A DNA stretch of 63,896 nucleotides, counting the filler, from Octopus bimaculoides (taxonomy: Eukaryota), in NCBI RefSeq assembly GCF_001194135.2. It is 5 parts of 5 records of this genome, joined end to end, with 100 filler letters (N's around TTAATTAATTAA, not from the genome) between each part and the next. Parts side by side here need not be neighbours in the genome. Positions count along the whole stretch, not along the records: positions 30,993 to 50,951 come from NC_068983.1; 4 more parts are not named here. One strand, 5' to 3'. The notes beneath the pieces are model-generated. The model saw only the letters and a program-made list of their open reading frames with translations, was not told where the DNA came from and made no database searches. The translations under genes and the position numbers were made by a program. Positions 30,993 through 50,733 of this stretch are shown piece by piece (the stretch's first letter is position 1; each line of letters starts with the position of its first letter).

Positions 30993-31276
30993 GAGGGGGA
31001 GAGAGAGATGACATTTATAAAATTCTTGCGCAACATTAAACGTTGAAAGTAGATATGATAGAAAACTCCACTGTAAATTGCATATAAAAGCTATATTTAT
31101 ACAGTTTCTATTCAATACGGCTAACATTGCTGACATTCAACATGAACGCCATCTTTCGTAAGACATCGTACAAACCGGTTTTCCAACTCACTGAAAGCAT
31201 TCTTCAATTGGTTTTCTGTGATTTCATTGATTGCTTGTGTAACTCTGTCCCTATGTTCATCTTAAGACTTGATGAA

Positions 31277-31479
31277 GGCGACGAACTGGCAGAATCGTTA
31301 GCACGCCGAGCGAAATGCTTTGTCTGCCGTTTCGTTCTGAGTTCAAATTCCACCGAGGTCGATTTTGCCTTTCATCCTTTCGGGTTGATAAAATAAATAC
31401 CAGTTGTGCACTAGGGTCAATATAATCGACTTAACCTCTTCTCCAAAATTTCTGCCCTTGTGGCAAAATTTGAAACCAG
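31277..31479 (+). mobile_element. SINE family B, older tail variant
   Basis: GGCGACGAACTGGCAGAATCGTTAGC..GTTCAAATTCC; tail CCCTTGTGGCAAAATTTGAAACCA. Confidence 0.9.
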
Positions 31480-31509
31480 CTTAAGAGTTGATAAGTAGAC
31501 AGTAGTTAT

Positions 31510-32140
31510 ACTAAGACTCTATAAAAATAGTCACATAGAGCCATATCAGGCGAACGGGGTGACCAAGCAATTTGTCGAGCCCTATCACTCTGTTTGTCTA
31601 CATAGGTATTATTCAAAACCCGTTGGATATCTGAAACCTAGTAACATGCTACGTCGCCTTGCTGAATGATCTAACTATCATAGCTCAGATGTGAGAGAAT
31701 TCAGCAACATTAGAAGGTAACACTTACTATTCACCGTTACTCCTTCAAATAAGAAGCGGCCGAAAGTGCATGACTTCCTGGTTGAGCGAGGGCTCACTTC
31801 TCTCTGAATTCAAGCAATTGTGGCGATACATTTTACCATTGAATTGAAAAGCAGTTTTTTCAGAAAATGTCAACAATTGGGAAGTAGTAATTTTGACAAA
31901 ACCTGTTGGCAAAAAATCCATTCATGCACCGAAGTCTTCTTCCTTTAGCATTTCAACTATTTACACGTTATAAGCAGGTTCATTTCGTTTCACTTTCAGA
32001 GTCTTCTATCATCACTGCTAATGTGGTGGGATGTTTAGCACAACAGGTGCACGTTATGCTAATTTTATTGAATTTTTATAAAGTGTTTCCTGGACTTCGG
32101 TCACAGCCTCCGATGCTAACAGTTGGCCATTCACTAACAC
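31510..32140 (-). pseudogene. Tc1/mariner DD41D (rosa/VS-type) transposase relic
   Basis: YNV*IVEMLKEED, FSEKTAFQFNGKMYRHNC, FEGVTVNSKCYLLML, IIQQGD, WSPRSPDMALCDYF. Exactly 41 codons (31533-31655) separate the mutated D2 position and D3 (31530-31532). Confidence 0.75.
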
Positions 32141-32469
32141 AGTTTTTTTTGTTGTTCTTTTGTTTTTTTGTTTTTTTATTCAAACTGCTTCATCTAATTT
32201 TTAGCTAATTCCTGTGTGGTACATCTTTCGTGTAATAAGTTCTACTATTGTAATAAACGCTAATTCTGCAAGTCATAGCACTCAGTTAACCTTTTCCTCA
32301 AATGTTGCCATTTACAAAGCTTAAAGTCGCAGGATTTTATAAACACCTTATATATCTCTATATACGTGTGTACAAATTGTATGCATGTATATTTGTGTAT
32401 ATGTATATTTGTGTGTATGTGTATGTGTACGTGTATCTCTGACTGTTTTTAATGTATATGACAATGCTA

Positions 32470-32532
<63 letters not shown>

Positions 32533-35177
32533 ATGGATGGATATATAATTCATTATAGGCTGAGTATAATTACAGTAGCTGTTCAAATGCCAAGAGTTTC
32601 GTGTCGAAGCACTTAAGAAACTAACAAATCAAAAATCTCACTGCAATGACATCGAATCGTCAATAAAATACCGATTTGGTCATAATATTACAGTATATAA
32701 ATTTTTAGAACTCAAGATAGATGATCGCGTATAATGTCTAGCAACCCGTTAACCACACATTATATTGAAGTACCACAAAATTAACTTATCCGACCCTACT
32801 TTAATGAAGACTCTGATTACTAAATTGTTATGCAAAGTACACGATGCACACAAATGCAAATGTTTGGGATGGAATTCAGCACTTCGTTAGTTAAACCTCT
32901 TTTACAGCAAGCACTAGTTTTAGGCAGCAGACTGTTCATTAATTAGAGTCATGGGCGCTAACGTGTTTTGCATGCTAGAAAGCCATTTCTTTTCTCTGGT
33001 GACTAATTTGGGGTCAAGCATAAAGACACAGAACTTTTTGACATTTCCACAGGGCGTTTTGATTGAGCCTGAATATGTAATTTAATAGAATTATTTACTT
33101 TAAACTCATTACAGGCAAAATTTCACTCCCAAGATACAGAGCTTTAATAGATGACAGACTAATCACATTACGTTATTAAAGTGACCAACAGCTTGAACGT
33201 TTTAGAAGAAAAGTCTAATTGAAATGTTCAAAGAATTTAATTTAAGAATCAACGTTAGGGCCAACATTAACATAGCTAATTTCTAAAAACATAACTTTAA
33301 ACTTAATCCCAGTAAAATCTAAAAAGATATTGTAATGCATAAATATTCCAACTATTCTGCTACTTCAAAAGTCTAGCCTAGTAATAGTAATCGGATCTTG
33401 GATATATCATAAGATGAAGAATTTTTAAACCATACTTCTGAGTATTGCAATGGTATAATAGAACGTATTTAAAGAAAGAAAAATTTTGTAAGATTTTATG
33501 ATTTAACCTACCATTTAGCTTTAAATGTCGGTTCAAATATTACTTTGTCTTTCTTAAACCTACGAAACAAAATCTTTCTTTAAAAAACTTAATTTTCTCA
33601 AAATTTTCAATAGAAGCAGTGTAATGTTGAGTCATAGCTGTTTCTACGACTCTGCACACCTCTTTAGCTATAATCAATCTGGAAATACACAAAATTCACT
33701 GCCTTAATACTAATATCCACTAATATCTATCCGCTAGTCTTTTTCAATAAAACTTTTCAATAAAATGTAATGTATACAACGAACATCTTTATTGGAAATA
33801 ACAGCGACGCAGAAAAAGGTTACAAGGGATTCACAGACAAAACAGAAAGATATATAAAAAAGATTTAACCAAAATACTTATTCGATTAGATATGAACGGA
33901 CAAGGATATTCACAATTTCTAGATCTGCCGGTTAAATGTCGGAACTGTGTTCTCATACATTACTAAATTCAAATTCATTCTCTGTTTATCTGAAAAGTAT
34001 AATATATCGATGCAACCACTTAATCTGTTAACTTCTCTCCGAATTTAGTCTCTCCTTATCTCACCAGAGAAAGAGCATCTTGCCAACATTCAGTTTGTAT
34101 ACCGGACAAATTTTGTAATACACTGTTATTTTCACTGTCAGAAACTTTTTCGTATCCTCTCAAAACTCGTATTTAATATCACAGTACTTTTTTTTCCCCC
34201 TATTCATTTCATCGCTGCCGTAGTTGTACAGCAGGTTATTTACGGGCAACCTCGCTTGCATTGTAGAATTTCACATCATATACTGGACCTCTTGCATGTA
34301 ACATTCACCTGAATTTTGATATCTCACTGCAGTTCCATTCCCCTTCATTTAAACAACTGAGGTAAATACAACTAAATGCATATATATTTATGCACATGAG
34401 GGTCGACTCCTGTACTCTATTTTACAACTTCTTTTTGTCTTCTTCTTTATTCAATGTACGTAAATGCGCCGTTGCAATTCCACTAAGAAATAAAATTAGA
34501 ATCTGCATACTCAAGCATGTACACATCATTACAACACCCATCTCGAAGTATGTAAAAATAAATGCGCATGTGGGGAGATTTCCAGGTATTTATACATGTA
34601 TGGACATACATATATGTGTATGTATATGTATGCTTGTAGGTTTTACATATTAGTGTATACGTGCATGAATGCATTTGCGTATAAGCCATACATGTACGTG
34701 CATGCATATATACACACGTCAGCGATCACTGAACTCTACAATTACGACTATATGGTCTTCATGGATATAATTCCACTGTGCCCAGATGAGAATGTTTAAA
34801 ACTGTAACTTATTGACGGGACATCTAAAATAAAAAGTCGGACTGCAAAAGGGTATAACATGTAGAAAGAAAAAAATTATATATACGTATTACTGAATTAT
34901 ATATGCATTACATGGGAGAATGGTATCAAAATAAGTGTGTGTGCGTGTGTGCGTATGTCTGTGTGTGTGCGTTTATGTGTGTGTAACATATTAGGAACAT
35001 AGTATATAGATATACACAGAATATAAGTATTTGTGGATTGCGATTGTGGGAAGAAATATATACTAAGCTTTGCTATGTGTGTGTACACACATTCTACATA
35101 TGTGTAGGCTTTTTATGTATATGCGCGACTATGTTTAAGAATGAGTGTTCTGACTGTGTGGGATGAAAATAACACAT

Positions 35178-35447
35178 TTTGGAAACTGAAAATGCCTAAG
35201 AACTAAAATGTTGTTATTTTTTAATTGCTAGAAAAATGCAAAATTTTCGCTGAGATCAATCAAGAGCATTTACTTCTTCAAGCTCCCTAAACTCCGAAAA
35301 TGAGGGATTTTTGTAAATTTTTTACAATAGCGGAGTTTGTGGGTTTGAGGGAGCAAATGCCCTTGACTGATCTAAGCGAAAATTTAGCATTTTTCTAGTA
35401 ATAATATACAGCAAGATTCTAGGCCTCAGGCATTTTCAATTTCTACA
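35178..35447. mobile_element. Foldback MITE with ~120-bp imperfect arms
   Basis: GAAACTGAAAATGCCT / AGGCATTTTCAATTTC and CTAGAAAAATGCAAAATTTTCGCTGAGATCA / TGATCTAAGCGAAAATTTAGCATTTTTCTAG. Confidence 0.8.
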
Positions 35448-36432
35448 ATTGTTTTTATTTTCACTCCAACTTAACACACATGTATGTGTGTGCGGGTAAT
35501 ATATATATACANNNNNNNNNNNNNNNNNNNNNNNNNNNNNNNNNNNNNNNNNNNNNNNNNNNNNNNNNNNNNNNNNNNNNNNNNNNNNNNNNNNNNNNNN
35601 NNNNNNNNNNNNNNNNNNNNNNNNNNNNNNNNNNNNNNNNNNNNNNNNNNNNNNNNNNNNNNNNNNNNNNNNNNNNNNNNNNNNNNNNNNNNNNNNNNNN
35701 NNNNNNNNNNNNNNNNNNNNNNNNNNNNNNNNNNNNNNNNNNNNNNNNNNNNNNNNNNNNNNNNNNNNNNNNNNNNNNNNNNNNNNNNNNNNNNNNNNNN
35801 NNNNNNNNNNNNNNNNNNNTATATATATATATATGGATGTATGTGTGTGTATATGTATATATATATATATATATACATGAACACACATATATATATATAT
35901 ATAGCTGCACATATATGCTTTTATGTATACATTCCTGTTATTGAATCGGTAGGTCTGTATAAATATTTCATACTCTTAGTTTTCTTCATCCTTTCCTCCC
36001 CAACACAATACACCCTTTCTTAAACACGCCACACTTCCACAATGCCACACGCATATTCTTATCACTCCCTCCAGAAATATGCTCTAATTTATGTAATCCC
36101 ATCATTCATAAACATATTTTTTTTAATTTTCTGTATATTTTATCTTATTTCATTCTACTCTGTTTTAATGGACATATGCGTGTACATGCGTATGTCTTTG
36201 TGTGTATGTGTGTACCTAAGTATGTATATATGCATGCATCATACTTAATATAAATACATCTCTGAAAGGCAAGTTTACTGCGGTATTCGCCCATAGATAA
36301 CATCTCTTGTGGGCACGCTGTTGTTAAAATACTATTCATCTCCAGAGGAAAATTAAAATTGTCCCAGCAACCATGATATATTTTCTGGTATACTATTTTC
36401 TATTACACTGATTCTATTGCATATAATTGATA

Positions 36433-36463
<31 letters not shown>

Positions 36464-36833
36464 NNNNNNNNNNATACATATGTAGATATAGGAGAATTTG
36501 TTGTTGAAAATGCATCTGAAATTGAAAAACTTGTAATTGTTTTTAAATAAATTTACTCACATACATACCAAACAAATTTGTATGTATGTATGTATATACG
36601 TATGTATGTATGTTTGTGTATGTATGTGTATATGTATGTATGTATATACAATTTATTGCTATATTTAATAATTTATAAATATGTGTGTATGTGTGTGCGT
36701 GTGTGGGGGTGTCATTTATAGTCTTAATTAATATTTTAATCTATTTATCTACTTAATTTTCTTGACCATAGCTGTCAGTACCTGAGCAATACCTTCTGTG
36801 ACATTGGCCGTCACGCACACACACACGCACACG

Positions 36834-36865
<32 letters not shown>

Positions 36866-38083
36866 TACATACATACATACATACATACACATTCTTATCA
36901 AACGAACAAAAATGAAAGCGTTTTGAGAACTTTTTCATGGACAAAAGTAAAAAAGTATTTACATTTTTATCAAAGTATGTTACCGACTTCACTTGCTTTA
37001 GAAAGATGATTTAGTCCTGCCGAAATGACAGGAACAATAAACTGAAATAAATTAAATTAATCTTTAGTGAGATTAGTTCTGTAAGTTCACATGTTTTTCT
37101 TACAAAAACCATATGGCGCTGGTGTTTTGTTTCCTTGTGATTGCTGTNNNNNNNNNNGATTAGTTCTGTAAGTTCACATGTTTTTCTTACAAAAACCATA
37201 TGGCGCTGGTGTTTTGTTTCCTTGTGATTGCTGTTGGATCGTGGTGGTATTTGCAGCATTACCAACACTCCTGCATTTTTTAAGCATTTACTTTTCTTTT
37301 TTGTGTTTTTTTTAATTGTACTCGTGTGAAACCTTTTAATCTTTTCAATATATATATATAGTTGGAATTTACAAAAAAAAAAGACGAAGATGGGTGTGTA
37401 AACAATAAACAAAGGCAGAACGAGCATCTCAAGTCATTTAGAATAATTTAATTAGGGTAAGGTGAATTTGAAGTCTTACAACCGTTTCTGAGATAACCCA
37501 AGTGGTAGGTTAACATGTCCACGCACTAGGTATTCCTTCATCAGAAACAAGGTATGAATATTTTAGATGGGGAAAAATTTAGTTTCCAAGGAATAAAATT
37601 CACAGTTTATAAAGAATAAAATAGAAGAATGAAGGAGTAGAATAAGAATAAAGAGTAAACGTGGTTAGAAGAATATAGGCAAGAGAATAATATTCACAAC
37701 TCAACTTTTTCCAGAGGATATGAAAATAATATAATATATACCTGCTATAACGGAACTCTAACATGGATCCCCAGATCCAACCTTAGTTGTAATCTTGGAA
37801 CCTAACGGACGACTAACTACAGTACTTACACAGCGTACCTATTCGCCTAGATCACAAGTGAACTAAGCCCCTCATATATATATATAAAGAGAATGAGGTG
37901 GGTTGAAGGTACAGTTCCTCACAGGGAATGACCATTGGCCCAATCACTGAGATCTGTACTCTCGATTCCGTCAATGAATATATAAACTGTATTTGATGGC
38001 ACTTTTTTCTCACAATGTCTCAAAATATCACCCCGAGTCCTATATGCGAAACTGGGCCTCCCTTAAATTGATTTTGTATCCAA

Positions 38084-38795
38084 TAGTGGCGGCTCGTGTG
38101 TAGGCACTGCGGAATTGCAGCACCTCCTATTTCCACTCGATATTATCGATAACATTCAATAGAATGAGTCCTTTTTTCTTTAATTCTTTCTTTATACTTG
38201 TACATCATATAATCCTTAAATTTAATGTCAGTAGCCATCCCCTAGTTTATGAAAAAAATACAAAAATTCTTGTATAGAATTGTACGCTTCGCAGTTCCAG
38301 CGACGCGGTGTTTGGCTGTTGTGCTCATGCTCACATGTCCGAGATAGGGAGCTTCACGCTAAGGAGAAAGAGCACTGTGGTTCATGCAGTGCCGACTCTG
38401 GTGTGCTGGTGAAAGGTAGTTTCTTTTTGACTCCATGTGTGTTGTGCTTAAAAACGTGTTTATATTCTTGAATGTGATTAAGTGTAGAATTAGGTTATTA
38501 TCCTGCTTCCAGCTACAGTGTTGCTTCTAGAATTTGAAAAATAGAGCAGATTCCCACCACCCACCACCCTAATTTTGTGATTTAGGTGGAATTTTTGAAA
38601 AGCAAGGGGGAATTTGCGGTGGTGTTCGGTGAACAAATCAAACACACTACCCGGCAGTGGCTAAAACGCGAACCAATTAGGTTTGTGTATAAATTTTCTT
38701 TTTATATGTTTGTTTTCTTTTACACAATATCAAAACAACGGCTAAAAATTTTCTGAAGCAGCACCCCAACTAATTTTATATACGAGCCGCCACTG
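38084..38795. mobile_element. Non-autonomous hAT-like element (712 bp)
   Basis: TIRs (T/C)AGTGGCGGCTCGT / ACGAGCCGCCACTG; 8-bp flanks GTATCCAA / GTACCTAA match at 6/8, consistent with a decayed hAT TSD. Confidence 0.8.
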
Positions 38796-38871
38796 GTACC
38801 TAACGTACCTTACTTTAATCTAATTATAATCCAAACTCACTCTTCTACCTAGCTTTACTCTGTAATAATAA

Positions 38872-39087
38872 TCGTTTCTACTCTAGGCACAAGGCCCGAA
38901 ATTTTGGGGGAGGGGGGAACCAGTCGATTAGATCTACCCCAGTACGCAACTGGTACTTAATTTATCGACTCCGAAAGGGTGAAAGGCAAAGTCGACCTCG
39001 GCGGAATTTGAACTCAGAACGTAAAGACAGACGAAATACCGCTTAACATTTCGCCCGGCGTGCTAACATTTCTGCCAGCTCGCCGAC
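38872..39087 (-). mobile_element. Full-length SINE family B monomer with a 17-bp TSD
   Basis: TTACTCT(G/A)TAATAATAA at 38855-38871 and 39088-39104. Confidence 0.94.
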
Positions 39088-40233
39088 TTACTCTATAATA
39101 ATAATATTTACTTACTGACGTCACAAGAATTTTAGAAATTTCAAGAACGCGAAATAATTATTTATTTGGATAGAAAACATTTTAAACCCAATATTTGCCC
39201 GCTATTATTTATAGCCTTATTTGATCGAGATTCACTCCTAAAAATGAAATATTTGCTAAAACATTATTTGTAGTGTTATTACACTACAAATGATAATATT
39301 GTTTAAGCAAATAACGATGGAGCGGCGACATTCGCCAATACCAGTTGATCCATTACGACTAAATAAGCTTAAAAACGTTCCTACAAAAAAAAATCAACAG
39401 GAAACCACAGAAAACGAGGCGTAACTGACAGCAAATGACGGTCATTGCAAAAAGCTATCGTAGGAAACATTAACATTCAGAGCATAAAGAAATGTCCCTG
39501 CCATACGAATTGGTAAGCTTTACTGGTGAAAGAGGTCGATGTATTTACATGTGGAGAGTTAGTGAGTACGTAAAGTAACTGAGTACGATTAGACTCCCTC
39601 CACAAAGGACGCCATTTGTCAAAGTAAAATAATCATGATCAGTTGCCAGTTCGTTTACTTAGAGTGCTTATCAGAGTTCCTTCTAATTTTTACTAGTGAT
39701 GTACGCAAAAAAAAATTGCATAATATGCCTAATTTTTTTTATAAGGTTCAAATTGTGTGCAGTACAGAGGCTACTGAAATTGGGATGCGTCTCACACGGC
39801 AGTATGCTATTAAATATGGTAGTCTATACACATACGGAATTCAATCAAATCTAGAATTATAGATGTGTATGTATACGCACACACGCACACATTCACACAA
39901 CCACACATACACACACGCACACATAAATATAAATATATATATGAATAACAGAAAAATGGATCGAACGACATTCTTTATTTCAATTGCGTCGTTTAATCCA
40001 TTTTCTATTATTCATCTGTATATATAAATTCTACGGATTCTATGGCCCTTCTGGTGTGTATCCACTCACAAGAGCCTTCTCACTGTATCATGACATCTGG
40101 TAGCTAATACCTATGGACGAGCTTTGCATCGCATACCACAAGGATTTTATACAAATCTTATTTAAGTGTGTATGTGTGTGTGTATATTTGTGTGTGTGTA
40201 TTTATGTACAGATGTATCTATGTATGAATGTAC

Positions 40234-40277
<44 letters not shown>

Positions 40278-40339
40278 GCGCGCGTTGTGTGTGCATGAGT
40301 GAGTGTGTATATGTGTACACATATATGCATACATGTAAG

Positions 40340-40475
40340 CTTCTGCATAGTTTCTGTTTGCTAGAATCCTTTTACAAGATATTGGTAAACTCGACGTTAT
40401 TCTAGAAGACACTTGGCTAATTCGAGTAGTCGAATCGTTGCGATGAAACCTTTTAACTACTCAGCCATGCTTGCA
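40340..40475 (-). mobile_element. Old, internally deleted SINE family A variant
   Basis: Reverse complement reads GCATGGCTGAGTAGTTAA..GCCAAGTGTCTTCTAG..CAGAAACTATGCAGAAGC. Confidence 0.65.
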
Positions 40476-40487
40476 CCTATATACACG

Positions 40488-40521
<34 letters not shown>

Positions 40522-41219
40522 TGTATGTATGTGTGTATGTATGTATGTATGTGTATATATTATATATATATGCATATAAACATATATGCTTTTATGTATA
40601 TATATATATNNNNNNNNNNNNNNNNNNNNNNNNNNNNNNNNNNNNNNNNNNNNNNNNNNNNNNNNNNNNNNNNNNNNNNNNNNNNNNNNNNNNNNNNNNN
40701 NNNNNNNNNNNNNATATAGGTATATATAAATATATATACATATATGTATGTGTGTGTATGTGTGTGTGTACATATATATGCATATATATATATATTCATA
40801 CACATGCATACATACATACATACATACATACAAACATACATACATATATACATACATACATACATACATACATACATACACATTACCATTTTGATTCACA
40901 AATTTTCTGCTGTTTTTGTAAATGTCAATGAGGAAGTGATACCGGATGTGCAAGTGTGTTTCAAACTATTACTTTATAATCTACTGTATTTCGCAATCCG
41001 GTTACCAAATTCTGGTTTAACTTTCTCAGTTGCATAAGTTGCATAAATATAATTTTAATTTTATTTTTCATTTTGTACTAAAAATCAGGTCTCAGAATTT
41101 GAGTGGGTATTAGCCTGTATCGTAACTTACCCCGCCCTGCAAAACTCATTAGCAAAATATGAAATCAAGAATTGGGTCTGGGACGCCGAGCCGAGGTCGC
41201 ATTGCCACTTTGATGGTGT

Positions 41220-41345
41220 TTACTACAAGTCAAAGATGGAGCTTCTGTGTAGTCGTTTAACCCGTTAGAAATATCAGCTAAATATGCATCAAATTATTAC
41301 CTGCGTTCTTGAAAGGGAGGTAACGTATTTGATATAGTCCTATAT
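41220..41345 (+). repeat. Old dispersed repeat (family D), core 'G(C/T)TAGAAATA.CAGC.AAAT..C.TCAAAT...AC'
   Basis: Similar diverged segments seen by eye near 20670-20780, 47120-47190, 50335-50390 and 56895-56960, and inverted near 22150-22220. Confidence 0.4.
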
Positions 41346-41397
41346 TCTCAAACCCGTGGAGAATGACTCTTTTAGTTATAGGCAGCATCTGTCTGCG

Positions 41398-41441
<44 letters not shown>

Positions 41442-42033
41442 GACATATACACACGCACACACAGACATGCACACGCACACGCTCACACTCACACACACAC
41501 TCTAAAGTCGTCGGCAGTCATAGACCGTCAAGCCAAAATTCAACGACTCATTAATTTTCTTGAGAAAGATACAGCAGTGTCTTCACTTTCTTTTCCATCG
41601 CTTTATCTACAGTTTACTCCCATACTCACCCAAACTTACTGCGAGGCACAGAACCTATTCAGCCCTTAAGCAGAGGATTGGTTAATACGATACCAGGGCC
41701 TGCCTACATATTGCTGGGCCTGTATGCAACATGAATAGTAATCAACCCTCCCAACCCTCCTCTGACTTGTATATCCTCAACTACAAAACCATCTTCTACT
41801 ACTTAAATCAAGGGTAAGGAAACTTTTTAGTGCGGAGGACAAACATTGCCAATGAAAAAGGACTGCGGGCAGACCACAAGTTCTAACTCTTATATCTGTG
41901 TAAATCTTGTATATATATATGTATAATTCGATATCTAGACATGTAAATTTGACATGGGCGATTCTTTCTTGTCTTGGGATTCACGATCAAACGGCTGGGT
42001 GGAATTGCGCGAAAAATTACACAAATAGGCGTA

Positions 42034-42432
42034 GGAGTGGCTGTGTGGTAAGTAGCTTGCTTACAAACCACATGGTTCTGGGTTCAGTCCCACTGCGTGG
42101 CACCTTGGGCAAATGTCTTCTACTATAGCCTCGGACCGACCAAAGCCTTGTGAGTGGATTTGGTACACGGAAACTGAAAGGAACCCGTCGTATATATGTA
42201 TATATATGTATGTGTGTATATGTTTGTCTGTCTGTGTTTGTCCCTCCAATATCGCTTGACAACCGATGCTGGTGTGTTTACGTCCCCGTAACTTAGCGGT
42301 TCGGCAAAAGAGATCGCTGGAATAAGTACTAGGTTTCCAAAGAATAAGTCTTGGGTTCGATTTGCTCGACTAAAGGCGGTGCTCCAGCATGGCCACAGTC
42401 AAATGACTGAAACACGTAAATGAGTAAATGAG
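42034..42432 (+). mobile_element. SINE family A, full length
   Basis: Colinear with 21253-21657 from head to tail. Confidence 0.95.
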
Positions 42433-42929
42433 ATGTCTAGACTGGTCCGGTGATGTTGCTAGGCTTTGTATTTTTTTCATAACTCGCATGGTTACCCAGA
42501 TAATCTACTATAATAATACTCTTGTGTTTATGAATGAGAAAGGAAGGGGTGATGTCATACTTGGTAGTGGGATGATGAAAATTGTACGCTGAAAAAATAA
42601 ATCAAACACCGTTTCAACTCTGTGTGAATATACGTGTGTATGCCAAAGGGGGTATGTGAATGTGGGTGTGTGTGCATGTGTGTGTGTTTGTGTGTGTGTG
42701 CATGCGCGCGTGCAATGGAAGTGGGATGGTTCATCTTTGTTCGCTTAGTATTTGGGTTTATTTTTTTGATTTGGTTGAATCTTGGTTGGGTTCTTTTTTT
42801 GTTCAGTTATTTTTAGCGTTTTGACAGAAAAATGTCATTCTAAAATTGTTTTTTAACGTAAGCATGCCCAAACAAATCGAATGCTTACACAGAGCAGGTT
42901 TTACATCCTTTCCCCAACTCTCTTTTCTT

Positions 42930-44070
42930 TGTACTTTGCTGTTGCTTTTACTCATGCTTTTGCTAAGATTAACTCTCTGGGAATATGTGTCAGGTATCGA
43001 TCTTCTGGCCGCCTCGTTAATCTGCACTGATTTGCTGCCAATTCAAAAGTTTTCCAGTCTCTTATTCGTGACCTCTTTTATGCAGATGACTGTGCCTTAG
43101 TCACTCATACAGTGGATGACATGCAAATACCTATGAATCGTATTTCTGCTTCTTGCAAGGCATTTGAACTTAGTATTAGCCTGGACAAGACTGTTGTAAT
43201 GTTCCAGCCTGCACCAGGAAATCCATATGTGGAACCAGCTATCTTGGTTGAAGGAACAATTCTGAAGGTGGTAGACAAGTTTGTCTACCTGGGAAGCACA
43301 CTCAGTTGTTCTTGCTCCCTGGATGATGAAATATCTTTCAGGCAGCAAAGAGCAACTGATTCCTTCCGGTCTCTTCAGTCTCGTGTCTGGTCCCAGCATG
43401 GCATCACAAAGCAAACAAAATTTGCTGTGTAGTGTGCATGTGTACTGACATTGTTCCTTTACTCATGTGAGACATGGACCCTTTACAAACGTCATGTAAA
43501 GGTCCTTGAACGCTTTCATCAGAGATGTCTCGGACTCATTCTGAATGTTGGCTGGACCTTAAAAACTCCAGACACACAGGTCCTGAGGACAGCTGATATC
43601 TTGAGTTTTGAGGTGATGGTGCACAAGCACCGGTTACCTTATTAAAATGAAGAATAGCAGGATCCCTAAGCAAATGTTATATGGGAACATGTGAATGGAA
43701 AGAGACCCCAGCAGAAACTAAAGCTGCGATTTAAGGACTGTGTCAAGTCTTCATTAAAGGCCTGTGATATGCAAGAAACTGACTGGGAGAGCAATACCTA
43801 TCTATCTTGCCACAGATGGAGGAAGCAGGTTAAGGAGAGGGTCGACACTTTTGGGAGAGCACGTATTCTGCATGAAGAACTTAAGCGCACTGCTGGTGCA
43901 TTGAATGGGGAAAGCTTGGTTTGCAATGTTTTGAGTCGTGTATGCTTGTCAAGAGCAGGGCTCATTAGCCACCAATGGAGCTGCAAATGCAAAATATACG
44001 TTATTCCTAGAGCGTACTGTTCCTGAATGTCAGTAATGGTCTTCCTCGATCACAAATGGACGGATCACAA
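42930..44070 (+). pseudogene. 5'-truncated RTE-clade LINE (RT C-half to 3' UTR)
   Basis: LFYADDCAL (YADD at 43079-43090), ISLDKTVVMFQP, KFVYLGSTLS, LYSCETWTLY, LERFHQRCL, RIPKQMLYG, KLRFKD and the C-terminal C.SRAGLISH; stops and frameshifts present. Confidence 0.95.
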
Positions 44071-44530
44071 ATGAACTCGAAACCACTTGGTTGCAAACGA
44101 AACATTAGCTGCATAAATAAACACTTGTATAAATGAAATGAAATAACTTCATCGGAGAATAGAGACCTAATTTTTTCATCAGATATGACAAGGCTTTGCA
44201 TCTACTCTACGAAAAGTGTTATATAATGAAACGAAATTATTATATGATGTACAAGGTAGTTCAAAAGTCTTTCCAACTATGATATAAAGCGGCTGATAAC
44301 TGAGGTCATTTCAGTTTCTCAATGTAGTGCTTGTCTCTTCCTCTCTCTCTCACTCTCTCACATTTCCTACTTTACATATATCAATGTGTGTGTATGTGTG
44401 TCAAACCGATGAAACGATGTGCGAATGTAAATTTTATCAAAAACATATTTTTCCCCTCTAAAAGAAGTTAATACATTCGAAATATTATGATCTTTCATTA
44501 ATTAAGAATTATTTTATAATCATTTTCCAG

Positions 44531-44684
44531 TTGATGATGATGTCCAATCAACTAATGCTTTGAAAACTAACTTACGGAAAAGTGCTGCCAAGAAACGACA
44601 GCGCAAGCAATTAATTCCAAACCAAACCAAAACAGACGATGACAAGAGCAAAAAGGACATAGAAGATAATAAAAAATCAGTTCG
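44531..44684 (+). CDS. Candidate internal exon of the otopetrin-like gene (charged cytoplasmic N-terminal region), phase 1 to phase 2
   Basis: Acceptor ATCATTTTCCAG, donor CG|GTATGG; open frame DDDVQSTNALKTNLRKSAAKKRQRKQLIPNQTKTDDDKSKKDIEDNKKSV(R). Splices in frame to 48132 (CG+T = Arg). Confidence 0.55.
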
Positions 44685-44692
44685 GTATGGAA

Positions 44693-44694
<2 letters not shown>

Positions 44695-44766
<72 letters not shown>
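44695..44766. repeat. (ATA)n microsatellite
   Basis: Direct read. Confidence 0.97.
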
Positions 44767-44769
<3 letters not shown>

Positions 44770-44785
44770 GTCATTTTTGACAAAT

Positions 44786-45190
44786 ATTGCTTGCTTGCTT
44801 GCTTCATGGTCTTGTTTGATGGGGCTGGGGTCATCCCAAGTTAGTGGTCCCGGGGGCGCCATCGTGCGTAGTGCCGACCAGGTCCACCAGTATCCTTCAT
44901 CACTGGCGGTCCTCCAAGATGACGTAGAGCTTCTGGAGATATTCCTTAATCACGTCCAGCCATCTAGTTCGGAGCCTGCCACGGGGCTTTGCCACGAGGC
45001 CTGCCACGGGGCCTGCCACGGGGCCTGCCATGAGGCCTCTTCCAGCCCGCAGTTACTGCGTCAAATGATATTAAAGACCTGGTAGGATGATCTGGTGGGA
45101 GGCCGAAGACATGTCCGTACCAGCGCATGAGATGAATAGCTATGAAGTGGGAGGCTGCGAGCTGGTACATGCATGCACGCAGTTCTATGT
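44786..45190 (-). pseudogene. 3' end of an RTE-type LINE with an (AGCA)n tail and an internal 12-bp tandem expansion
   Basis: RWYGHVFGLPPDHPTR..GWKRP(H/R)GRPRGRPRG../TRWLDVIK; five GCCTGCCACGGG-like units at 44974-45034. Confidence 0.88.
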
Positions 45191-45677
45191 TGACAAATAT
45201 CACCAAAAAAATAACGTTTTTTTAAAATTTGTTTCAGTTTGATTTTGCAAAGCTATGTATATATATATATTCATGGATTGAAAAAATCCTAAAGGCCACT
45301 GAGCGGTTCTCATAAATTTGATGCTCAGTTTTGCTTTTCATGGCATTTGGTGGGTTAGAAATGATTTACACTTGGTTCAGACGCCAGAATTTTGTGGATA
45401 TCATCAGACTCTTTGCTATGTATTCCCAACAGCTTATGAGCAGTGAGACGTGTCGAGTCAAGTGCACTACTGAAATACAAGTCACATAAATTTGAATTAA
45501 ATTTCATGTGATCTAACTCGGCTGTTTTTCATTTTATGGCTGCAACAGTGGTTCTCAGATATTTTCGTAAATAAAAAAATATTTTGGTGTAATTTGAGAA
45601 CAAAGTTGAAAAATATAAAAATATTTCTATTCAAAGAATGAAGTAATTCATAAATTTTAGCCTGTAAATACAAATGA

Positions 45678-45893
45678 TATTTTCTACTATAGGAACAAGT
45701 CCTGAAATTTTGTAAGGGTAAGGTTAATCGATAACATTGACCCCAGTCCTCAGTCGGTACTTATTTTACCGACTCCACTGAATAAAAGGCAAAATCGACA
45801 TCGGTGAAATTTGAACTCAAAATGCAAAGACGGAATAAATTGCTGCTAAGCATTTTTGCTCGGTGCGCTAACAATTCTGCCAATTCGATGCCC
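45678..45893 (-). mobile_element. Old SINE family B
   Basis: Colinear with monomer B; flanked by CCTGTAAATA at 45661 and about 45895 (possible TSD). Confidence 0.8.
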
Positions 45894-45944
45894 TCCTGTA
45901 AATAACAATAATATAAATTATAGGAGAGTATATAATACACCTTT

Positions 45945-46298
45945 ATTCTTTTCTACTCTAGGCACAAGGCCCGAAATTTTGAGGGAGGTGGGGCAGTCGA
46001 TTAGATCGACTCCAGTAAGATAGACGAAATAGCGATAAGCATTTCGCCCGGTGTGCTAACGTTTCTTATTTCTTTATTGCCCACAAGGAGCTAAACATAG
46101 AGGGGACAAACAAAGATAGACAAAGGATTAAGTCGATTACATCGACCCCAGTGCGTAACTGGTACTTAATTTATCGACCCCGAAAGGATGAAAGGCAAAG
46201 TCAACCTCGGCGGAATTTGAACGCCGAGGGTAACGGCAGACGAAATACCGCTGAGCATTTCGCACGGCGCGCTAACGTTTCTGCCAGCTCGCCGCCTT
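45945..46298 (-). mobile_element. Dimeric SINE family B with an internal deletion in the second monomer
   Basis: Same monomer junction (GGGCAATAAAGAAATAAGAAACGTTAGC) as 48413-48846. Confidence 0.9.
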
Positions 46299-46851
46299 CA
46301 CGAAATCATTATCGCTACACTCAATTCCAATAAGCTGTGTAGTTAAGAAGTTCGTGTTTGCAATGACATGACTCCTGGTTCAATCCCACTATGAGATAAC
46401 TTGGATAAGCGTCGCCTATAATCTCCTCATGTCGACCAATGTCCACTATGTAGAATTTTGTGGATGGAAATAATTGGCGGAGCTATATCAGTTCTTATGT
46501 GATTTAGCACCACAACCTTATCCTTCGATACCTTTAACAGAGTGCGTACTAAAATTTCTGGCGTACTAACGTTTCTGCTCCGCACCACCTTATAATACTT
46601 CTTTATTCAACGAATAAAACGTAAAATTTCACATTTTTTAAAATATAGTAACTCTGTCATGCGGTACACTGGTGTACCGCAACTCGCTGTGCGAGAACCA
46701 CTACCTTAAAGTTGTCCAATTAGGATCTCCTTTCCTTTTCTCCTTTTCCTCTTTATATAATCTTAAAACCTCGCATTTATGAAAGAAGGCAAAATAAGAT
46801 GTTATTATACGCATGGTCCTTCAGTGGATACGTAAAATTTATATCGTACAA

Positions 46852-47066
46852 GGCGGCGAGCTAGTAGAAACGTTAGCACGCCGGGCGAAATGCTTAGTGG
46901 TATTTCGTCTGTCTTTACGTTCTGAGTTCAAATTCCGCCGAGGTCGACTTTGCCTTTCATCCTTTCGGGGTCGATAAATTTAAGTACCAGTTGCATACTT
47001 GGGTTGATCTACTCGACTGCTCCCACCTCCCCAAAAATTTTGGGCCTTGTGCCTAGAGTAGAAAAG
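46852..47066 (+). mobile_element. Full-length SINE family B monomer with a probable 13-bp TSD
   Basis: TTATATCGT(A/C)CAA at 46839-46851 and 47072-47084. Confidence 0.93.
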
Positions 47067-48131
47067 AAAAATTATATCGTCCAAATACATAACAAGGAAC
47101 TTGATTTTCCTGAAAGAGCAGCTAAATCTGCTTTCAACCCTACTCTGTCGTTTTAAAAAGGAATAGACATATTGGATATTGTAATCTCAGATGCAATATG
47201 TTTTAAAAAGTTGTGATGATCATAGGGTGAATATTTTTTTACCAAGGATCTGCTCAAACAGGGAAAACTTTGGCTTAATAAACAAGAAATTGCTTTAATA
47301 TGAAAAATTGAAGACGAATGTTTATGCACATTCAACGTAATGTGTTAATGATATCATAATTACATAACATCATACTTATATGATATCATGTTCATATAAG
47401 ACATGGCAGCGGGTGATAGAAAGGATAGAGCGTTGAATAAAATACTTTGACGTTTCGTTATGTCATTCTATATTTTGAGTTCAAATCCTGCCTAGAAAAT
47501 TTTTGCCTTTCACCTTTTTGGGTTCGATGAACAATGTACCAGTCTACTAACACTAGGACCTAAGTGATATGGCTGTAACTTTGACCGTAATACCCTTACA
47601 TGACCATTGTCCGTTGAATGAAACTAGTAGAATAAAAATAATCATTCTTACGTTTGTAAATATCGTTCTCAACCCTGCTTTAATAATATCTCTCTCTCTT
47701 TTCTCTCTCTCTATTCCTCTCCCTCTTCATCTTTCTCTTGACATAGAGAGGGGAGGAGAAGGGTGAGATCAACTTCATTATACTTTAACAAACAAACTGA
47801 ACCTTAAGGGAAAAAAATGATTTTAAAAAATTTTATTTTAAATTTTAAGTCATAAATCGATATTATTTATAAATCGCTATTATTGAAAACTGGTCGAGAA
47901 TGATATTTACGTAAGCATGTAAGAATGATTCTTTGACTCTGTGTGTGTGTGTGTGTGTGTGCGCGTTCATGCGTTCATGTATGTGTGTATTTTTTTCATT
48001 TATTTATGTGTTTCAGCCAAGTGGTTGCGGTCATGCTGGTGCACCACCGTATGTATGTATACTAGTTAAAAAAACATGCGAAAATTATTCAGTTTAAAAC
48101 ATTTACTACGTTAACTCTTTATGTTTTGCAG

Positions 48132-48246
48132 TGATGGTTTCTTCATCATACTCAGTGGAATGTACGGTCTACTACTGGTGGTGCTTGGTGCTGTGATACC
48201 AATTTCTGAAACTTTTGCAAATCTTACGACCTTGTATTTCTTCGAT
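48132..48246 (+). CDS. Otop: Otopetrin-family proton channel, exon encoding the first TM region (phase 2 to phase 0)
   Basis: Acceptor ATGTTTTGCAG, donor GAT|GTATGC; encodes DGFFIILSGMYGLLLVVLGAVIPISETFANLTTLYFFD. This aligns without gaps to the recalled invertebrate otopetrin TM1 pattern DG....LS..YG.LLVV.G...P..E........F.E. Confidence 0.75.
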
Positions 48247-48412
48247 GTATGCATATTTTTATATCTTTAACATATATTTCAATCATCTTTGGTCTATGGC
48301 TGGTTGTATTTTCTTCCAGTGACATATTAGAATATTAAAATACCGTTTTGTTCATCGACTATAATTTCCCTTAAGACATGTTGTATTGTGCCAATGCTAT
48401 TAAACCAATGTA

Positions 48413-48846
48413 AGGCGGCGAGCTGGCAGAAACGTTAGCACTCCGGGCAAAAATGCTTAGCGGTATTTCGTTTGCTGTTACGTTCTGAGCTCAAATTCAG
48501 CCGAGATCGACTTTGCTTTTCATCCTTTCGGAGTCGATAAATTAAGTGCCAGTTACGCTCTGGGGTCGATGTAATCGACTTAATCCCTTTGTCTGTCCTT
48601 GTTTGTTCCCTCTGTGTGTAGCCACTTGTGGGCAGTAAAGAAATAAAAAAACGTTAGCTCGCTGGGCGAAATGCTTAGTGGTATTTCGTCTGTCTTTACG
48701 TTCTGAGTTCAAATTCCATTGAGGTCGACTTTGCCTTTCATCCTTTCAGGATCGATAAATTAAGTACCAGTTGCGTACTAGGGTCGATCTAATTAACTGG
48801 CCCCCTCCCCAAAAATTTCGGGACTTGTGCCTAGAGTAGAAAAGGT
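48413..48846 (+). mobile_element. Intact dimeric SINE family B (434 bp) with a perfect 15-bp TSD
   Basis: TATTAAACCAATGTA at 48398-48412 and 48847-48861; two tRNA-derived monomers with different tails. Confidence 0.95.
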
Positions 48847-48895
48847 TATTAAACCAATGTACAAATATATCCAATATAGATAAAAAACAATATTT

Positions 48896-49106
48896 GTGGC
48901 AAGCTGGCAGAATCGTTACCGCACCGGGCAAAATGCTTAACAATATTTCTTTTGTCTTTACGTTCAGAGTTCAAATACCGCCGGTGTCGACTTTGCTTTC
49001 ATCCTTTCGGAGTCGATAAAATAGGTACTAGTTGAGCACTGGGATTGATATAATCGACATAGCCGCTTCCCCGAAATTGCTGGCAATGTACCAAGACTTG
49101 AAACCG
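48896..49106 (+). mobile_element. SINE family B, older tail variant
   Basis: GGCAAGCTGGCAGAATCGTT..GTTCAAATACC; tail ACCAAGACTTGAAACC. Confidence 0.88.
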
Positions 49107-49476
49107 ATATTTATTTGTTGCAGAGAGTTGTCAATTGGCCAGATCAGTAAAATAGTTGGTAAATTAATTACGATATATAGATAGAGCTCTTTATTTTCCC
49201 AATTCAAACCCGGTCACCTTTACCTTTCATTCTCCCAGGGTTGCTAAAATACCCTAGTTAAGTACGGAGGATCAACATATTGGACCACACGCTTTTCCCT
49301 AAATATGAGGCCGTTTTGGAGAGAGGCGGAGAGTTTCGACAAAATTAGAAATGAATATATATTTATTTCGTGCACTATTACGATAAACAGAGCCTGTTGT
49401 TTGACTTTCTACAGCCAAAAATATCCATCAATGTGATATAGGATCTATTGATTAGGAAAGTTGAGAAATAGGTGCA

Positions 49477-49758
49477 GGCGTGGCTGTGTGGTAAGAAGCT
49501 TGCTTTCCAACCACATGGTACCGGGTTCAGTCCCACAGCGTGGCACCTTGAACAACTGTCTTCTACTATAGCGTCGGAACGACCAAAGCCTTGTGAGTGG
49601 ATTTGATAGACGGTAACTGATAGAAGGCTGTCGTACATATATATGTATGTATATATATGTGCGCGCGTGTGTGTGTGTGTCTTTGAGTCTGTGTTTGTCA
49701 ACCACCATCGCTTGATAACTAGTGCTTGTGTGTTTACGTCCCTGTAATTTAACGGATC
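49477..49758 (+). mobile_element. SINE family A, 3'-truncated
   Basis: Head and body match 21253; homology stops just before the palindrome at 49766. Confidence 0.9.
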
Positions 49759-50152
49759 ACCTACCAGTGATCTCATATGAGATCACTTAGAAATTACAAA
49801 TTTCGTAATTATCTGTCAATATTTACACATATCTAACCTTTTTGCTATATCTACTAGGTATATTTCTCTGATATTCAAATGGGGTTTGCTAATTTTTAAC
49901 CCACTATCTCGCTTATTTCTATTTAAAATGTTATTTTGAAATGTTATTTTGAAATGTTATTTTGATCATTTCAGCGTGTTTCTAGGGCTGTTTTATGCTA
50001 GAAACCAAAGTTTCATTAAACCGTTACAGTATCCACAGTTACAGTATAATTTTCACTGGATCTACGTCAGTTATTCCGCAGTGTTCGTTTAGTTTAGAAT
50101 TGATGAGGGAAACAGAAAATGGGTTTGGTATGAAACAAGATTCGTAGCAAAT

Positions 50153-50236
50153 CCTTGAGCAAGTGTCTTCTATAGCCTCGGGCCCACCAAAGCCTTGTGA
50201 GTGGATTTGGTAGACGTAAACTGAAAGAAGTCCATC

Positions 50237-50309
<73 letters not shown>

Positions 50310-50733
50310 TCAAAGGACATACTAAGTATGTTTACCTGCTGAAAATAACAGTCAAAACTCTTATTTAAATCGCCAAAATACACTGATAATAATTACAGAA
50401 ATCAACCGTCCGAGGGCAAACGGGTTTAGACAATCTCTCAGCATACATTCAAGTACTTCAAGTATTTTTAAATTGTTACACTAGATAATAATGGAGTTAA
50501 TGATATCGTCGCAAATTATCTTTTCTCTCGAATTTTCTCGTGAATAATTTGCTCCGTATATGTGTGTGTTTGTGTGTTTATGTCCCCTTAACTTAACGGT
50601 TCAGCAAATGAGACCGATAAAATAAGTACTAGGCTTACAAAGAATAAGTCCGAGGGTCGATTCGTTCGACTAAAAGCAGTGCTCCAGCATGGCCGCAGTC
50701 AAATAACTGAAACAGGTAAAGGAATAAAAGAGA
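50153..50733 (+). mobile_element. SINE family A pieces (50153-50240 body; 50570-50733 3' end) separated by (TA)n and unrelated sequence
   Basis: CCTTGAGCAAGTGTCTTC..CCTTGTGAGTGGATTTGGTAGACG, then AACTTAACGGTTCAGC..CTCCAGCATGGCCGCAGTC. Confidence 0.8.

What the first reader, a model, noticed from the sequence alone, without database searches (positions are those of the whole stretch)
44531..48246. Unannotated otopetrin-like proton channel gene hidden among SINEs
Seen: two AG/GT-bounded exons (154 nt and 115 nt) absent from, or mis-framed in, the ORF track. They splice in frame to give ...KKDIEDNKKSVR-DGFFIILSGMYGLLLVVLGAVIPISETFANLTTLYFFD. Established: otopetrins are proton-selective channels (OTOP1 is the vertebrate sour-taste receptor and is needed for otoconia formation). 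The 38-aa segment matches, without gaps, my recalled invertebrate TM1 pattern (LS..YG.LLVV.G..P..E). It has Leu where many invertebrate otopetrins have Lys in YGKLL. Inference: a candidate acid-sensing or statolith-related channel in a cephalopod.
Basis: partly seen in the sequence, partly recalled or inferred. Interest (0 to 1): 0.7.

Follow-up and report, generated by a model that had tools for sequence, protein, structure and literature searches.

The report
Two real exons, cephalopod otopetrin gene
The two short exons are real, conserved coding exons of an octopod gene of the otopetrin proton-channel family, the second encoding the first membrane helix; the gene is ordinary and functionally unstudied, and its orthologue is already catalogued in another octopod.

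Summary
Exons 44531-44684 (154 nt) and 48132-48246 (115 nt) have AG/GT flanks and splice in frame.

Pfam PF03189 gives no hit because the model starts at TM3, 79 residues past exon 2.

A TM1 profile built from 20 invertebrate otopetrins scores the exon-2 ORF at 55.3 bits (E 2e-16). The next ORF in the piece scores 5.6 bits.

The 89-aa spliced product aligns without gaps, across the junction, to residues 641-728 of Argonauta hians 'uncharacterized protein LOC115209666'. That protein is 1295 aa and carries a full PF03189 domain. Identity is 75% (E 3e-39).

In the Argonauta genome the two matching exons are also 154 and 115 nt, with the same splice positions. dN/dS between the species is about 0.10.

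The piece therefore lies inside a large OtopLc-like gene and holds exons 2 and 3 of 8. The other exons lie beyond its edges.

'Unannotated' could not be tested. A role in acid sensing or statolith formation is speculation. This is a new member of a known family, of modest interest.

The parts
44531..44684 (+). Coding exon of 154 nt (phase-1 acceptor, ends 2 nt into an Arg codon). It encodes the last ~51 residues of the basic, Lys-rich cytoplasmic N-terminal region. It is orthologous to Argonauta exon B (P0330 aa 639-690).
   Evidence: AG/GT flanks. tblastn with P0330 gives 67% identity over 52 aa, E 1.3e-8. The Argonauta exon has the same length and the same splice positions. dN/dS is 0.12.
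44685..48131 (+). Intron of 3447 nt between the two exons. It holds an (ATA)24 repeat at 44695-44767, a GC-rich 12-nt tandem repeat at 44970-45038, and interspersed-repeat copies at about 45760-46320 (-) and 46850-47070 (+).
   Evidence: The Argonauta counterpart is 4370 nt. Nucleotide similarity to Argonauta stops at the splice sites.
48132..48246 (+). Coding exon of 115 nt (ends in phase 0). It encodes otopetrin transmembrane helix 1 and the start of the TM1-TM2 loop (DGFFIILSGMYGLLLVVLGAVIPISETFANLTTLYFFD). It is orthologous to Argonauta exon C (P0330 aa 691-728).
   Evidence: TM1 HMM 55.3 bits, E 2.3e-16. Gapless hits to many otopetrins. 76% identity to P0330. Identical exon length and splice sites in Argonauta. 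dN/dS 0.06.
30993..44530 (+). Inferred 3' part of the long intron that follows the large N-terminal exon. No coding match to the orthologue. It holds microsatellites, assembly gaps, interspersed repeats, LINE-like ORFs at 43112-44026, and one conserved non-coding block at about 40917-41030.
   Evidence: tblastn with P0330 and P0316 finds nothing significant here. The Argonauta intron is 40.6 kb. A collinear conserved block is seen.
48247..50951 (+). Inferred 5' part of the next intron. The TM2 exon (AFYIYLY...) is not present here. At least ~1.2 kb consists of interspersed-repeat copies (48418-49111, 49457-49760, 50166-50268, 50567-50733).
   Evidence: A TM2 HMM and tblastn find no TM2 exon. 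The Argonauta intron is 1034 nt.

Best explanation
The piece lies inside a large gene of an octopod cephalopod. That gene is the orthologue of Argonauta hians LOC115209666, a member of the otopetrin (OtopLc-like) family.

The two exons are the second and third of eight coding exons. The first encodes the end of a long, probably disordered, Lys-rich cytoplasmic N-terminal region. The second encodes transmembrane helix 1 of the channel's N-terminal six-helix half.

By homology, the full protein would be a 12-TM otopetrin that forms a proton-selective channel: about 640 aa of N-terminal extension followed by about 600 aa of channel.

Shown here: the exons exist, they splice in frame, they are otopetrin TM1, they are orthologous to an annotated otopetrin-domain gene, their splice sites are conserved, and they have been under purifying selection.

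Inferred: the rest of the gene is intact outside the piece, and the product conducts protons.
For: Exons and frame.

Family assignment: a TM1 HMM from 20 otopetrins scores 55.3 bits, E 2.3e-16, against a next-best of 5.6 bits. Gapless alignments are seen to Argopecten, Nucella, Babylonia, Octopus, Gigantopelta, Patella and arthropod otopetrin-like proteins.

Orthology: the spliced product matches P0330 aa 641-728 at 75% identity over 88 aa, with no gap across the junction, E 2.75e-39.

Family membership of the orthologue: P0330 has a full-length PF03189 domain (profile 1-434, 446 bits). It also hits solved otopetrin structures (8ug4_A, E 7.5e-53), with the TM1-TM2 stretch aligned to chain residues 63-120.

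Gene structure: the Argonauta gene has exons of exactly 154 and 115 nt with the same AG/GT positions.

Selection: pS 0.68, pN 0.15, dN/dS 0.10.

Transcript evidence from another species: an intron-free 3346-nt contig (L002, run SRR27666085) encodes the related P0316, which is 60.7% identical to P0330 and has the same segment contiguous.
Against: Only two of eight coding exons are visible. The channel core (TM3-TM12, PF03189) lies outside the piece, so its intactness is not shown.

There is no transcript evidence from the source species itself.

The TM2 exon is not within 2.7 kb downstream, whereas in Argonauta it is 1.0 kb downstream. Repeat insertions explain this but do not prove it.

Direct searches with the peptide alone found nothing in Pfam, in the word-index protein search or in PDB. 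The first is explained by the model's start at TM3. The second was a false negative, because P0330 shares 14-16-residue identical words with the query and was still missed.
Confidence: 0.9

Rival explanations
1. The two exons are remnants of an otopetrin gene that has recently been disabled in this species. It would be a unitary pseudogene whose damage lies outside the piece.
For: Only 269 nt of coding sequence is visible. The next exon is not where it is in Argonauta. No full-length Octopus orthologue of P0330 appeared among the 120 best relatives of Octopus OtopLc, although P0330 itself did.
Against: Both exons keep open frames, exact lengths and all four splice dinucleotides. dN/dS is 0.10 with saturated synonymous change. 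The longer downstream intron is accounted for by several repeat insertions.
Confidence: 0.07
2. The exons are chance AG/GT-bounded open frames in AT-rich DNA, whose hydrophobic translation merely looks like a membrane helix.
For: The piece is 36% G+C and has 88 ORFs of 50 aa or more. T-rich DNA readily gives Leu/Ile/Phe/Val-rich peptides. A profile built only from vertebrate OTOP1 scores the ORF at -0.5 bits. Pfam and PDB gave no hit.
Against: E 2.3e-16 with an invertebrate TM1 profile. 75% identity across both exons to an annotated otopetrin protein. Conserved exon lengths, conserved splice sites and dN/dS of 0.10.
Confidence: 0.01
3. The exons are real, but in this species they are used mainly in a shorter, non-channel transcript. 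That transcript would carry the N-terminal region only, or would be a separately annotated 'uncharacterized protein', rather than the full channel.
For: The Argonauta protein bears the name 'uncharacterized protein LOC115209666', not an otopetrin name. This is compatible with a partial Octopus model as the source of the name. This is inference only.
Against: A TM1 helix under strong constraint (dN/dS 0.06) makes little sense without the rest of the channel. The Argonauta model and the L002 transcript join it to a complete PF03189 domain.
Confidence: 0.02

Closest known systems
Argonauta hians 'uncharacterized protein LOC115209666' (P0330, 1295 aa; GCA_054771915.1, contig BAAFZT010000015.1)
   Same: Orthologue. 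It is 75% identical over the 88 residues encoded here and contiguous across the junction. Exon lengths are identical (154 and 115 nt), as are the splice positions. It has a full PF03189 domain.
   Different: It comes from a different octopod lineage, and synonymous sites are saturated (pS 0.68). Its introns are 4370 and 1034 nt, against 3447 nt and more than 2705 nt here. There are 22 amino-acid differences in the 88 residues.
Octopus bimaculoides, O. sinensis and O. vulgaris 'proton channel OtopLc' (P0258 cluster, e.g. XP_052828448.1)
   Same: Same family and same TM1 motif (DSIMANLSGIYGMFLTVMGAVIPISEVFS). It is 59% identical to exon 2 over 29 aa.
   Different: Paralogue, not the same gene. 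It is only 43% identical to P0330 overall, and its N-terminal region is shorter and unrelated.
Gastropod and bivalve 'OtopLc-like' proteins with long N-terminal extensions (Nucella P0252, Babylonia P0237/P0315, Patella P0310, Aplysia P0318, Argopecten P0238)
   Same: These are the closest non-cephalopod relatives. They are 45-48% identical to P0330 over the channel and 68-72% identical to the core of exon 2.
   Different: Other molluscan classes. Their N-terminal extensions cannot be aligned with this one.
Functionally studied otopetrins: vertebrate OTOP1-3 (solved structures 6nf4, 6nf6, 6o84, 8ug6), Drosophila OtopLA (PMC8713817, PMC8211824), nematode OTOPs (PMC9909269)
   Same: Same family. 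The orthologue matches the solved structures by sequence. Exon 2 lands on the vertebrate TM1 'LSSQYGL' segment.
   Different: Similarity of the exon to vertebrate TM1 is not significant on its own (E 0.6-11). No functional data exist for any cephalopod member in the searched literature.

Membership tests
Otopetrin / otopetrin-like (ODP) family | N-terminal transmembrane helix 1 with the conserved LS..Y[GA]..L.V.G..P..E segment, followed by [FY][FY][ED] before TM2 | tested here: met
   A profile of 20 family members scores the window ORF at 55.3 bits, E 2.3e-16, covering profile positions 1-37.
Otopetrin / otopetrin-like (ODP) family | Pfam PF03189 Otopetrin domain (TM3-TM12) | not testable with these tools
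   The domain begins 79 residues after the end of exon 2 (P0330 aa 807). It is therefore encoded outside the piece. The miss is uninformative. The orthologue P0330 has the whole domain (446 bits).
Otopetrin / otopetrin-like (ODP) family | Twelve-TM topology and a C-terminal FYR box (PMC2268672) | not testable with these tools
   Only TM1 is in the piece. The orthologue ends ...GIFFRFHSTVCLSNIWKNAWK, aligned to the C-terminus of solved otopetrin 8ug4_A.
Otopetrin / otopetrin-like (ODP) family | Proton-selective conductance | not testable with these tools
   This needs electrophysiology. It is inferred from homology only.
Orthogroup of Argonauta LOC115209666 | Collinear exons with the same lengths, phases and splice sites, and higher identity to P0330 than to any paralogue | tested here: met
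   Exons of 154 and 115 nt in both species, with the same AG/GT positions. 75% identity to P0330, against 49% to P0316 and 59% or less to Octopus OtopLc.
Functional (non-pseudogene) coding sequence | Open frame, intact splice sites, dN/dS well below 1 | tested here: met
   dN/dS 0.10 (exon 1: 0.12; exon 2: 0.06), pS 0.68, pN 0.15. This holds only for the 269 nt visible here.

The most novel reading that the evidence does not exclude
In Octopus-type genomes, this second otopetrin paralogue is missing from, or truncated in, current protein annotation. The paralogue has a roughly 640-aa disordered N-terminal extension encoded by one giant exon tens of kb upstream. It would represent a mollusc- or cephalopod-specific otopetrin subfamily with a specialised role, such as statolith mineralisation or acid detection in chemotactile organs, possibly controlled through the conserved intronic element at about 40917-41030.
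Probability: 0.15. Interest if true: 0.5.

Novelty: new member of a known kind. Interest (0 to 1): 0.3.

Why it matters
Otopetrins are the proton channels behind vertebrate sour taste, otoconia formation and insect acid taste. No cephalopod member has been studied in the literature I searched.

Cephalopods build aragonite statoliths and taste by touch, so a second, well-conserved otopetrin paralogue is a reasonable candidate for either process.

The practical gain here is modest. The exon pair is validated, placed as exons 2-3 of 8, and tied to an orthologue that gives the full gene model. This would allow the gene to be completed in the source genome.

The work also shows that PF03189 cannot detect the first two helices of otopetrins. 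Exon-level scans with Pfam will therefore miss 5' exons of this family.

Tried and rejected
(1) Pfam scan of the spliced peptide and of exon 2 alone found no otopetrin hit. I rejected this as evidence after showing that PF03189 starts at TM3.

(2) The word-index homologue search with the 89-aa peptide returned nothing. This was a false negative, because P0330 shares 14-16-residue identical words with the query. It cannot support 'unannotated'.

(3) A PDB sequence search with the peptide returned nothing.

(4) A profile of vertebrate OTOP1 only, run against all ORFs, aligned the exon-2 ORF at the right place (profile 56-73) but at -0.5 bits. It is too remote to be useful.

(5) I tested the idea that the exon once ran on into TM2 and is now broken. 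The read-through VCIFLYL*HIF... and the +2 frame MHIFISLTYISIIFGLW... look a little like TM2. A TM2 HMM gives neither any score, and Argonauta has an intron at exactly this point. Rejected.

(6) A minus-strand ORF at 49031-49213 weakly resembles the otopetrin C-terminus (E 0.002-0.5). It lies in a repeat copy on the wrong strand. Rejected as chance.

(7) A + strand hit at 50664-50798 to the TM2 region (E 0.027) is translation of a (TA)n/(CATA)n microsatellite. Rejected.

(8) Exact-product look-ups of window ORFs, tried to extend the locus, were not on record.

(10) A Pfam scan of nine other ORFs in the piece gave no family. Rfam and tRNA scans of the piece gave nothing.
Full report
**Observation.** The piece (30993-50951, 36% G+C, several N gaps) contains the two segments exactly as described. 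The first is AG|44531-44684|GT (154 nt) and the second is AG|48132-48246|GT (115 nt). Spliced, they read DDDVQSTNALKTNLRKSAAKKRQRKQLIPNQTKTDDDKSKKDIEDNKKSVR|DGFFIILSGMYGLLLVVLGAVIPISETFANLTTLYFFD, with the Arg codon split CG|T. In a mechanical ORF list, exon 1 is buried in a 94-aa ORF that reads through the donor into an (ATA)24 repeat. The exon-2 ORF is only 49 aa. This explains why an ORF track hides them.

**First tests, and why they failed.** Pfam gave no otopetrin hit for the peptide, a word-index search of 5.8 billion proteins found nothing, and PDB sequences gave nothing. I then checked what PF03189 covers.

- On human OTOP1 the best stretch starts far inside the protein.
- On the molluscan proteins found later, profile position 1 aligns to the 'YLRLGA(I/V)GFGIG' helix, which is TM3.
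- This agrees with Hughes et al. 2008, who place the N-terminal end of pfam03189 just before TM3 (PMC2268672).

TM1 and TM2 are outside the model, so the Pfam miss is uninformative. The miss was a false negative of the word index, because a protein sharing 14-16-residue identical words with the query exists in the same collection (see below).

**Getting real family members.** Human OTOP1 retrieved only vertebrate OTOP1. A profile of 12 vertebrate OTOP1 sequences, searched exhaustively against 1.84 billion representatives, gave 837 hits. The best 150 were returned.

- Local tblastn of these against the piece hit one place only, the exon-2 ORF, with a series of invertebrate proteins.
- The alignments are gapless. 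Examples are Argopecten RDDIVIILSGLYGILLVVIGLVLPIAETF, Nucella/Babylonia FMILSGLYGILIVVLGAVIPLTEIF, Octopus OtopLc DSIMANLSGIYGMFLTVMGAVIPISEVFS, and the ostracod DGMFQMISAMYGKLLVVMGLAFPLSEIISSRIPDAFYE.
- In every case the matched segment lies just upstream of the part of the protein that matched the OTOP1 profile. Exon 2 also falls on the vertebrate TM1 'LSSQYGL'.
- An HMM built from the TM1 segments of 20 of these proteins, with the window excluded, scores the exon-2 ORF at 55.3 bits, E 2.3e-16, among 1266 ORFs of the piece. The next best scores 5.6 bits.

The recalled motif is therefore real and the match is not chance. Lys occurs in arthropod-type sequences, while molluscan ones have I, L or M.

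**Orthologue and gene model.** A search with Octopus OtopLc brought in an Argonauta hians protein, 'uncharacterized protein LOC115209666' (P0330, 1295 aa).

- The whole 89-aa spliced product aligns to its residues 641-728 at 75% identity without a gap. NKKSVRDGFFIILS is identical across the exon junction (E 2.75e-39).
- P0330 carries a complete PF03189 domain (446 bits).
- P0330 matches solved otopetrin structures (8ug4_A, E 7.5e-53), with its TM1-TM2 stretch aligned to residues 63-120 of that chain.
- An intron-free 3346-nt Logan contig (L002, run SRR27666085) encodes a related 1008-aa protein, P0316. It is 60.7% identical to P0330 and has the same segment contiguous. This is transcript-level support for the junction in a related species.

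The Argonauta genomic locus (L001) resolves into eight coding blocks.

- A 1.9-kb first exon (aa 1-639) comes first, followed by a 40.6-kb intron.
- Exon B is 43553-43706 and exon C is 48077-48191.
- Five more exons follow.
- Exons B and C are exactly 154 and 115 nt, with the same acceptor and donor positions as in the window. Nucleotide similarity stops at the splice sites.
- Between the two species pS is 0.68 (saturated) and pN is 0.15, giving dN/dS of 0.10 overall (0.12 for exon 1, 0.06 for exon 2).

**What the piece is.** The piece lies wholly inside the gene. It holds the tail of intron 1 (at least 13.5 kb), exon 2, intron 2 (3447 nt), exon 3, and the head of intron 3 (at least 2.7 kb).

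Neither the N-terminal exon nor the TM2 exon is in the piece. The first is expected, given the 40-kb Argonauta intron. The second is 1.0 kb downstream in Argonauta. Here that interval carries at least six interspersed-repeat copies, so a longer intron is plausible, though not proven. I tested and rejected the idea that TM2 is present in a shifted frame right after the donor (intron position conserved).

**Mechanism.**

- Shown: exon 3 encodes TM1 of an otopetrin, and exon 2 encodes the basic end of the cytoplasmic N-terminal region.
- Inferred from family knowledge: the full protein is a 12-TM otopetrin forming a proton-selective channel. This rests on OTOP1-3 as proton channels, Drosophila OtopLA in acid taste (PMC8713817, PMC8211824) and nematode OTOPs (PMC9909269).
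- Untested: a role in statolith formation or acid sensing. I found no paper on cephalopod otopetrins.

**Comparison and novelty.** The gene is a paralogue of the annotated Octopus 'proton channel OtopLc', which is 43% identical to P0330. Its nearest non-cephalopod relatives are gastropod OtopLc-like proteins, at 45-48% identity.

Whether it is annotated in the source genome cannot be decided with these tools. The Argonauta name points to an Octopus sinensis locus. Yet no full-length Octopus orthologue appeared among the 120 best relatives of Octopus OtopLc, although P0330 did. The Octopus model may therefore be partial.

It describes an ordinary, conserved gene of a known family, a new member of a known kind, and interest is modest.

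Noticed in passing
window ~40917-41030 (+), with L001 ~41203-41315: A single-copy, collinear conserved non-coding block lies in the intron 3.5 kb upstream of exon 1. It is 78.5% identical over 107 nt between the two octopods, with a 24-nt perfect core CTGTAAATGTCAATGAGGAAGTGA. That makes it as conserved as the coding exons, although synonymous sites are saturated. Stop codons occur in all frames in Argonauta, and the block is absent from transcript L002. A hairpin is possible in the window (minus strand z -3.2) but is not supported in Argonauta (z -0.6 to -1.4). There is no Rfam match apart from a weak microsatellite-driven mir-297 hit beside it.
   Followed up: partly
window 44695-44767: A perfect (ATA)24 microsatellite starts 11 nt after the exon-1 donor site. 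It makes the exon-1 frame read on as poly-Ile in ORF lists. The Argonauta intron does not align here.
   Followed up: partly
window 45760-46320 (-), 46850-47070, 48418-48600, 48636-48850, 48898-49111 (+): Six copies of a ~220-250-nt interspersed repeat (consensus ...GGCGGCGAGCTGGCAGAAACGTTAGC...GAGTTCAAATTCCGCCGAGGTCGACTTTGCC...) occur here, with a box-B-like GTTCAAATTCC. This is consistent with a tRNA-derived SINE, though ARAGORN finds no tRNA. Related copies occur in the Argonauta locus.
   Followed up: partly
window 42014-42433, 49457-49760, 50166-50268, 50567-50733: A second interspersed-repeat family is present here. It also has many copies in the Argonauta locus at 75-89% identity.
   Followed up: no
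window 43112-44026 (+): Three consecutive ORFs (106, 64 and 111 aa; e.g. ...LYSCETWTLYKRHVKVLERFHQRCLGLILNVGW...) look, from memory, like the region after the reverse-transcriptase domain of a LINE ORF2, broken by frameshifts. Pfam gives no hit, so the label is unverified.
   Followed up: partly
window 44970-45038: A GC-rich 12-nt tandem repeat (CGGGGCCTGCCA x5.7) lies inside the otherwise AT-rich intron 2. It gives Arg-Pro-Arg-Gly and His-Gly-Ala-Cys repeats in ORFs on both strands. No family hit.
   Followed up: no
window 35512-35819, 36464-36473, 37148-37157, 40610-40713: Assembly gaps of variable length (308, 10, 10 and 104 N), flanked by microsatellites, point to a short-read draft scaffold. 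Sequence next to the gaps may be unreliable.
   Followed up: no
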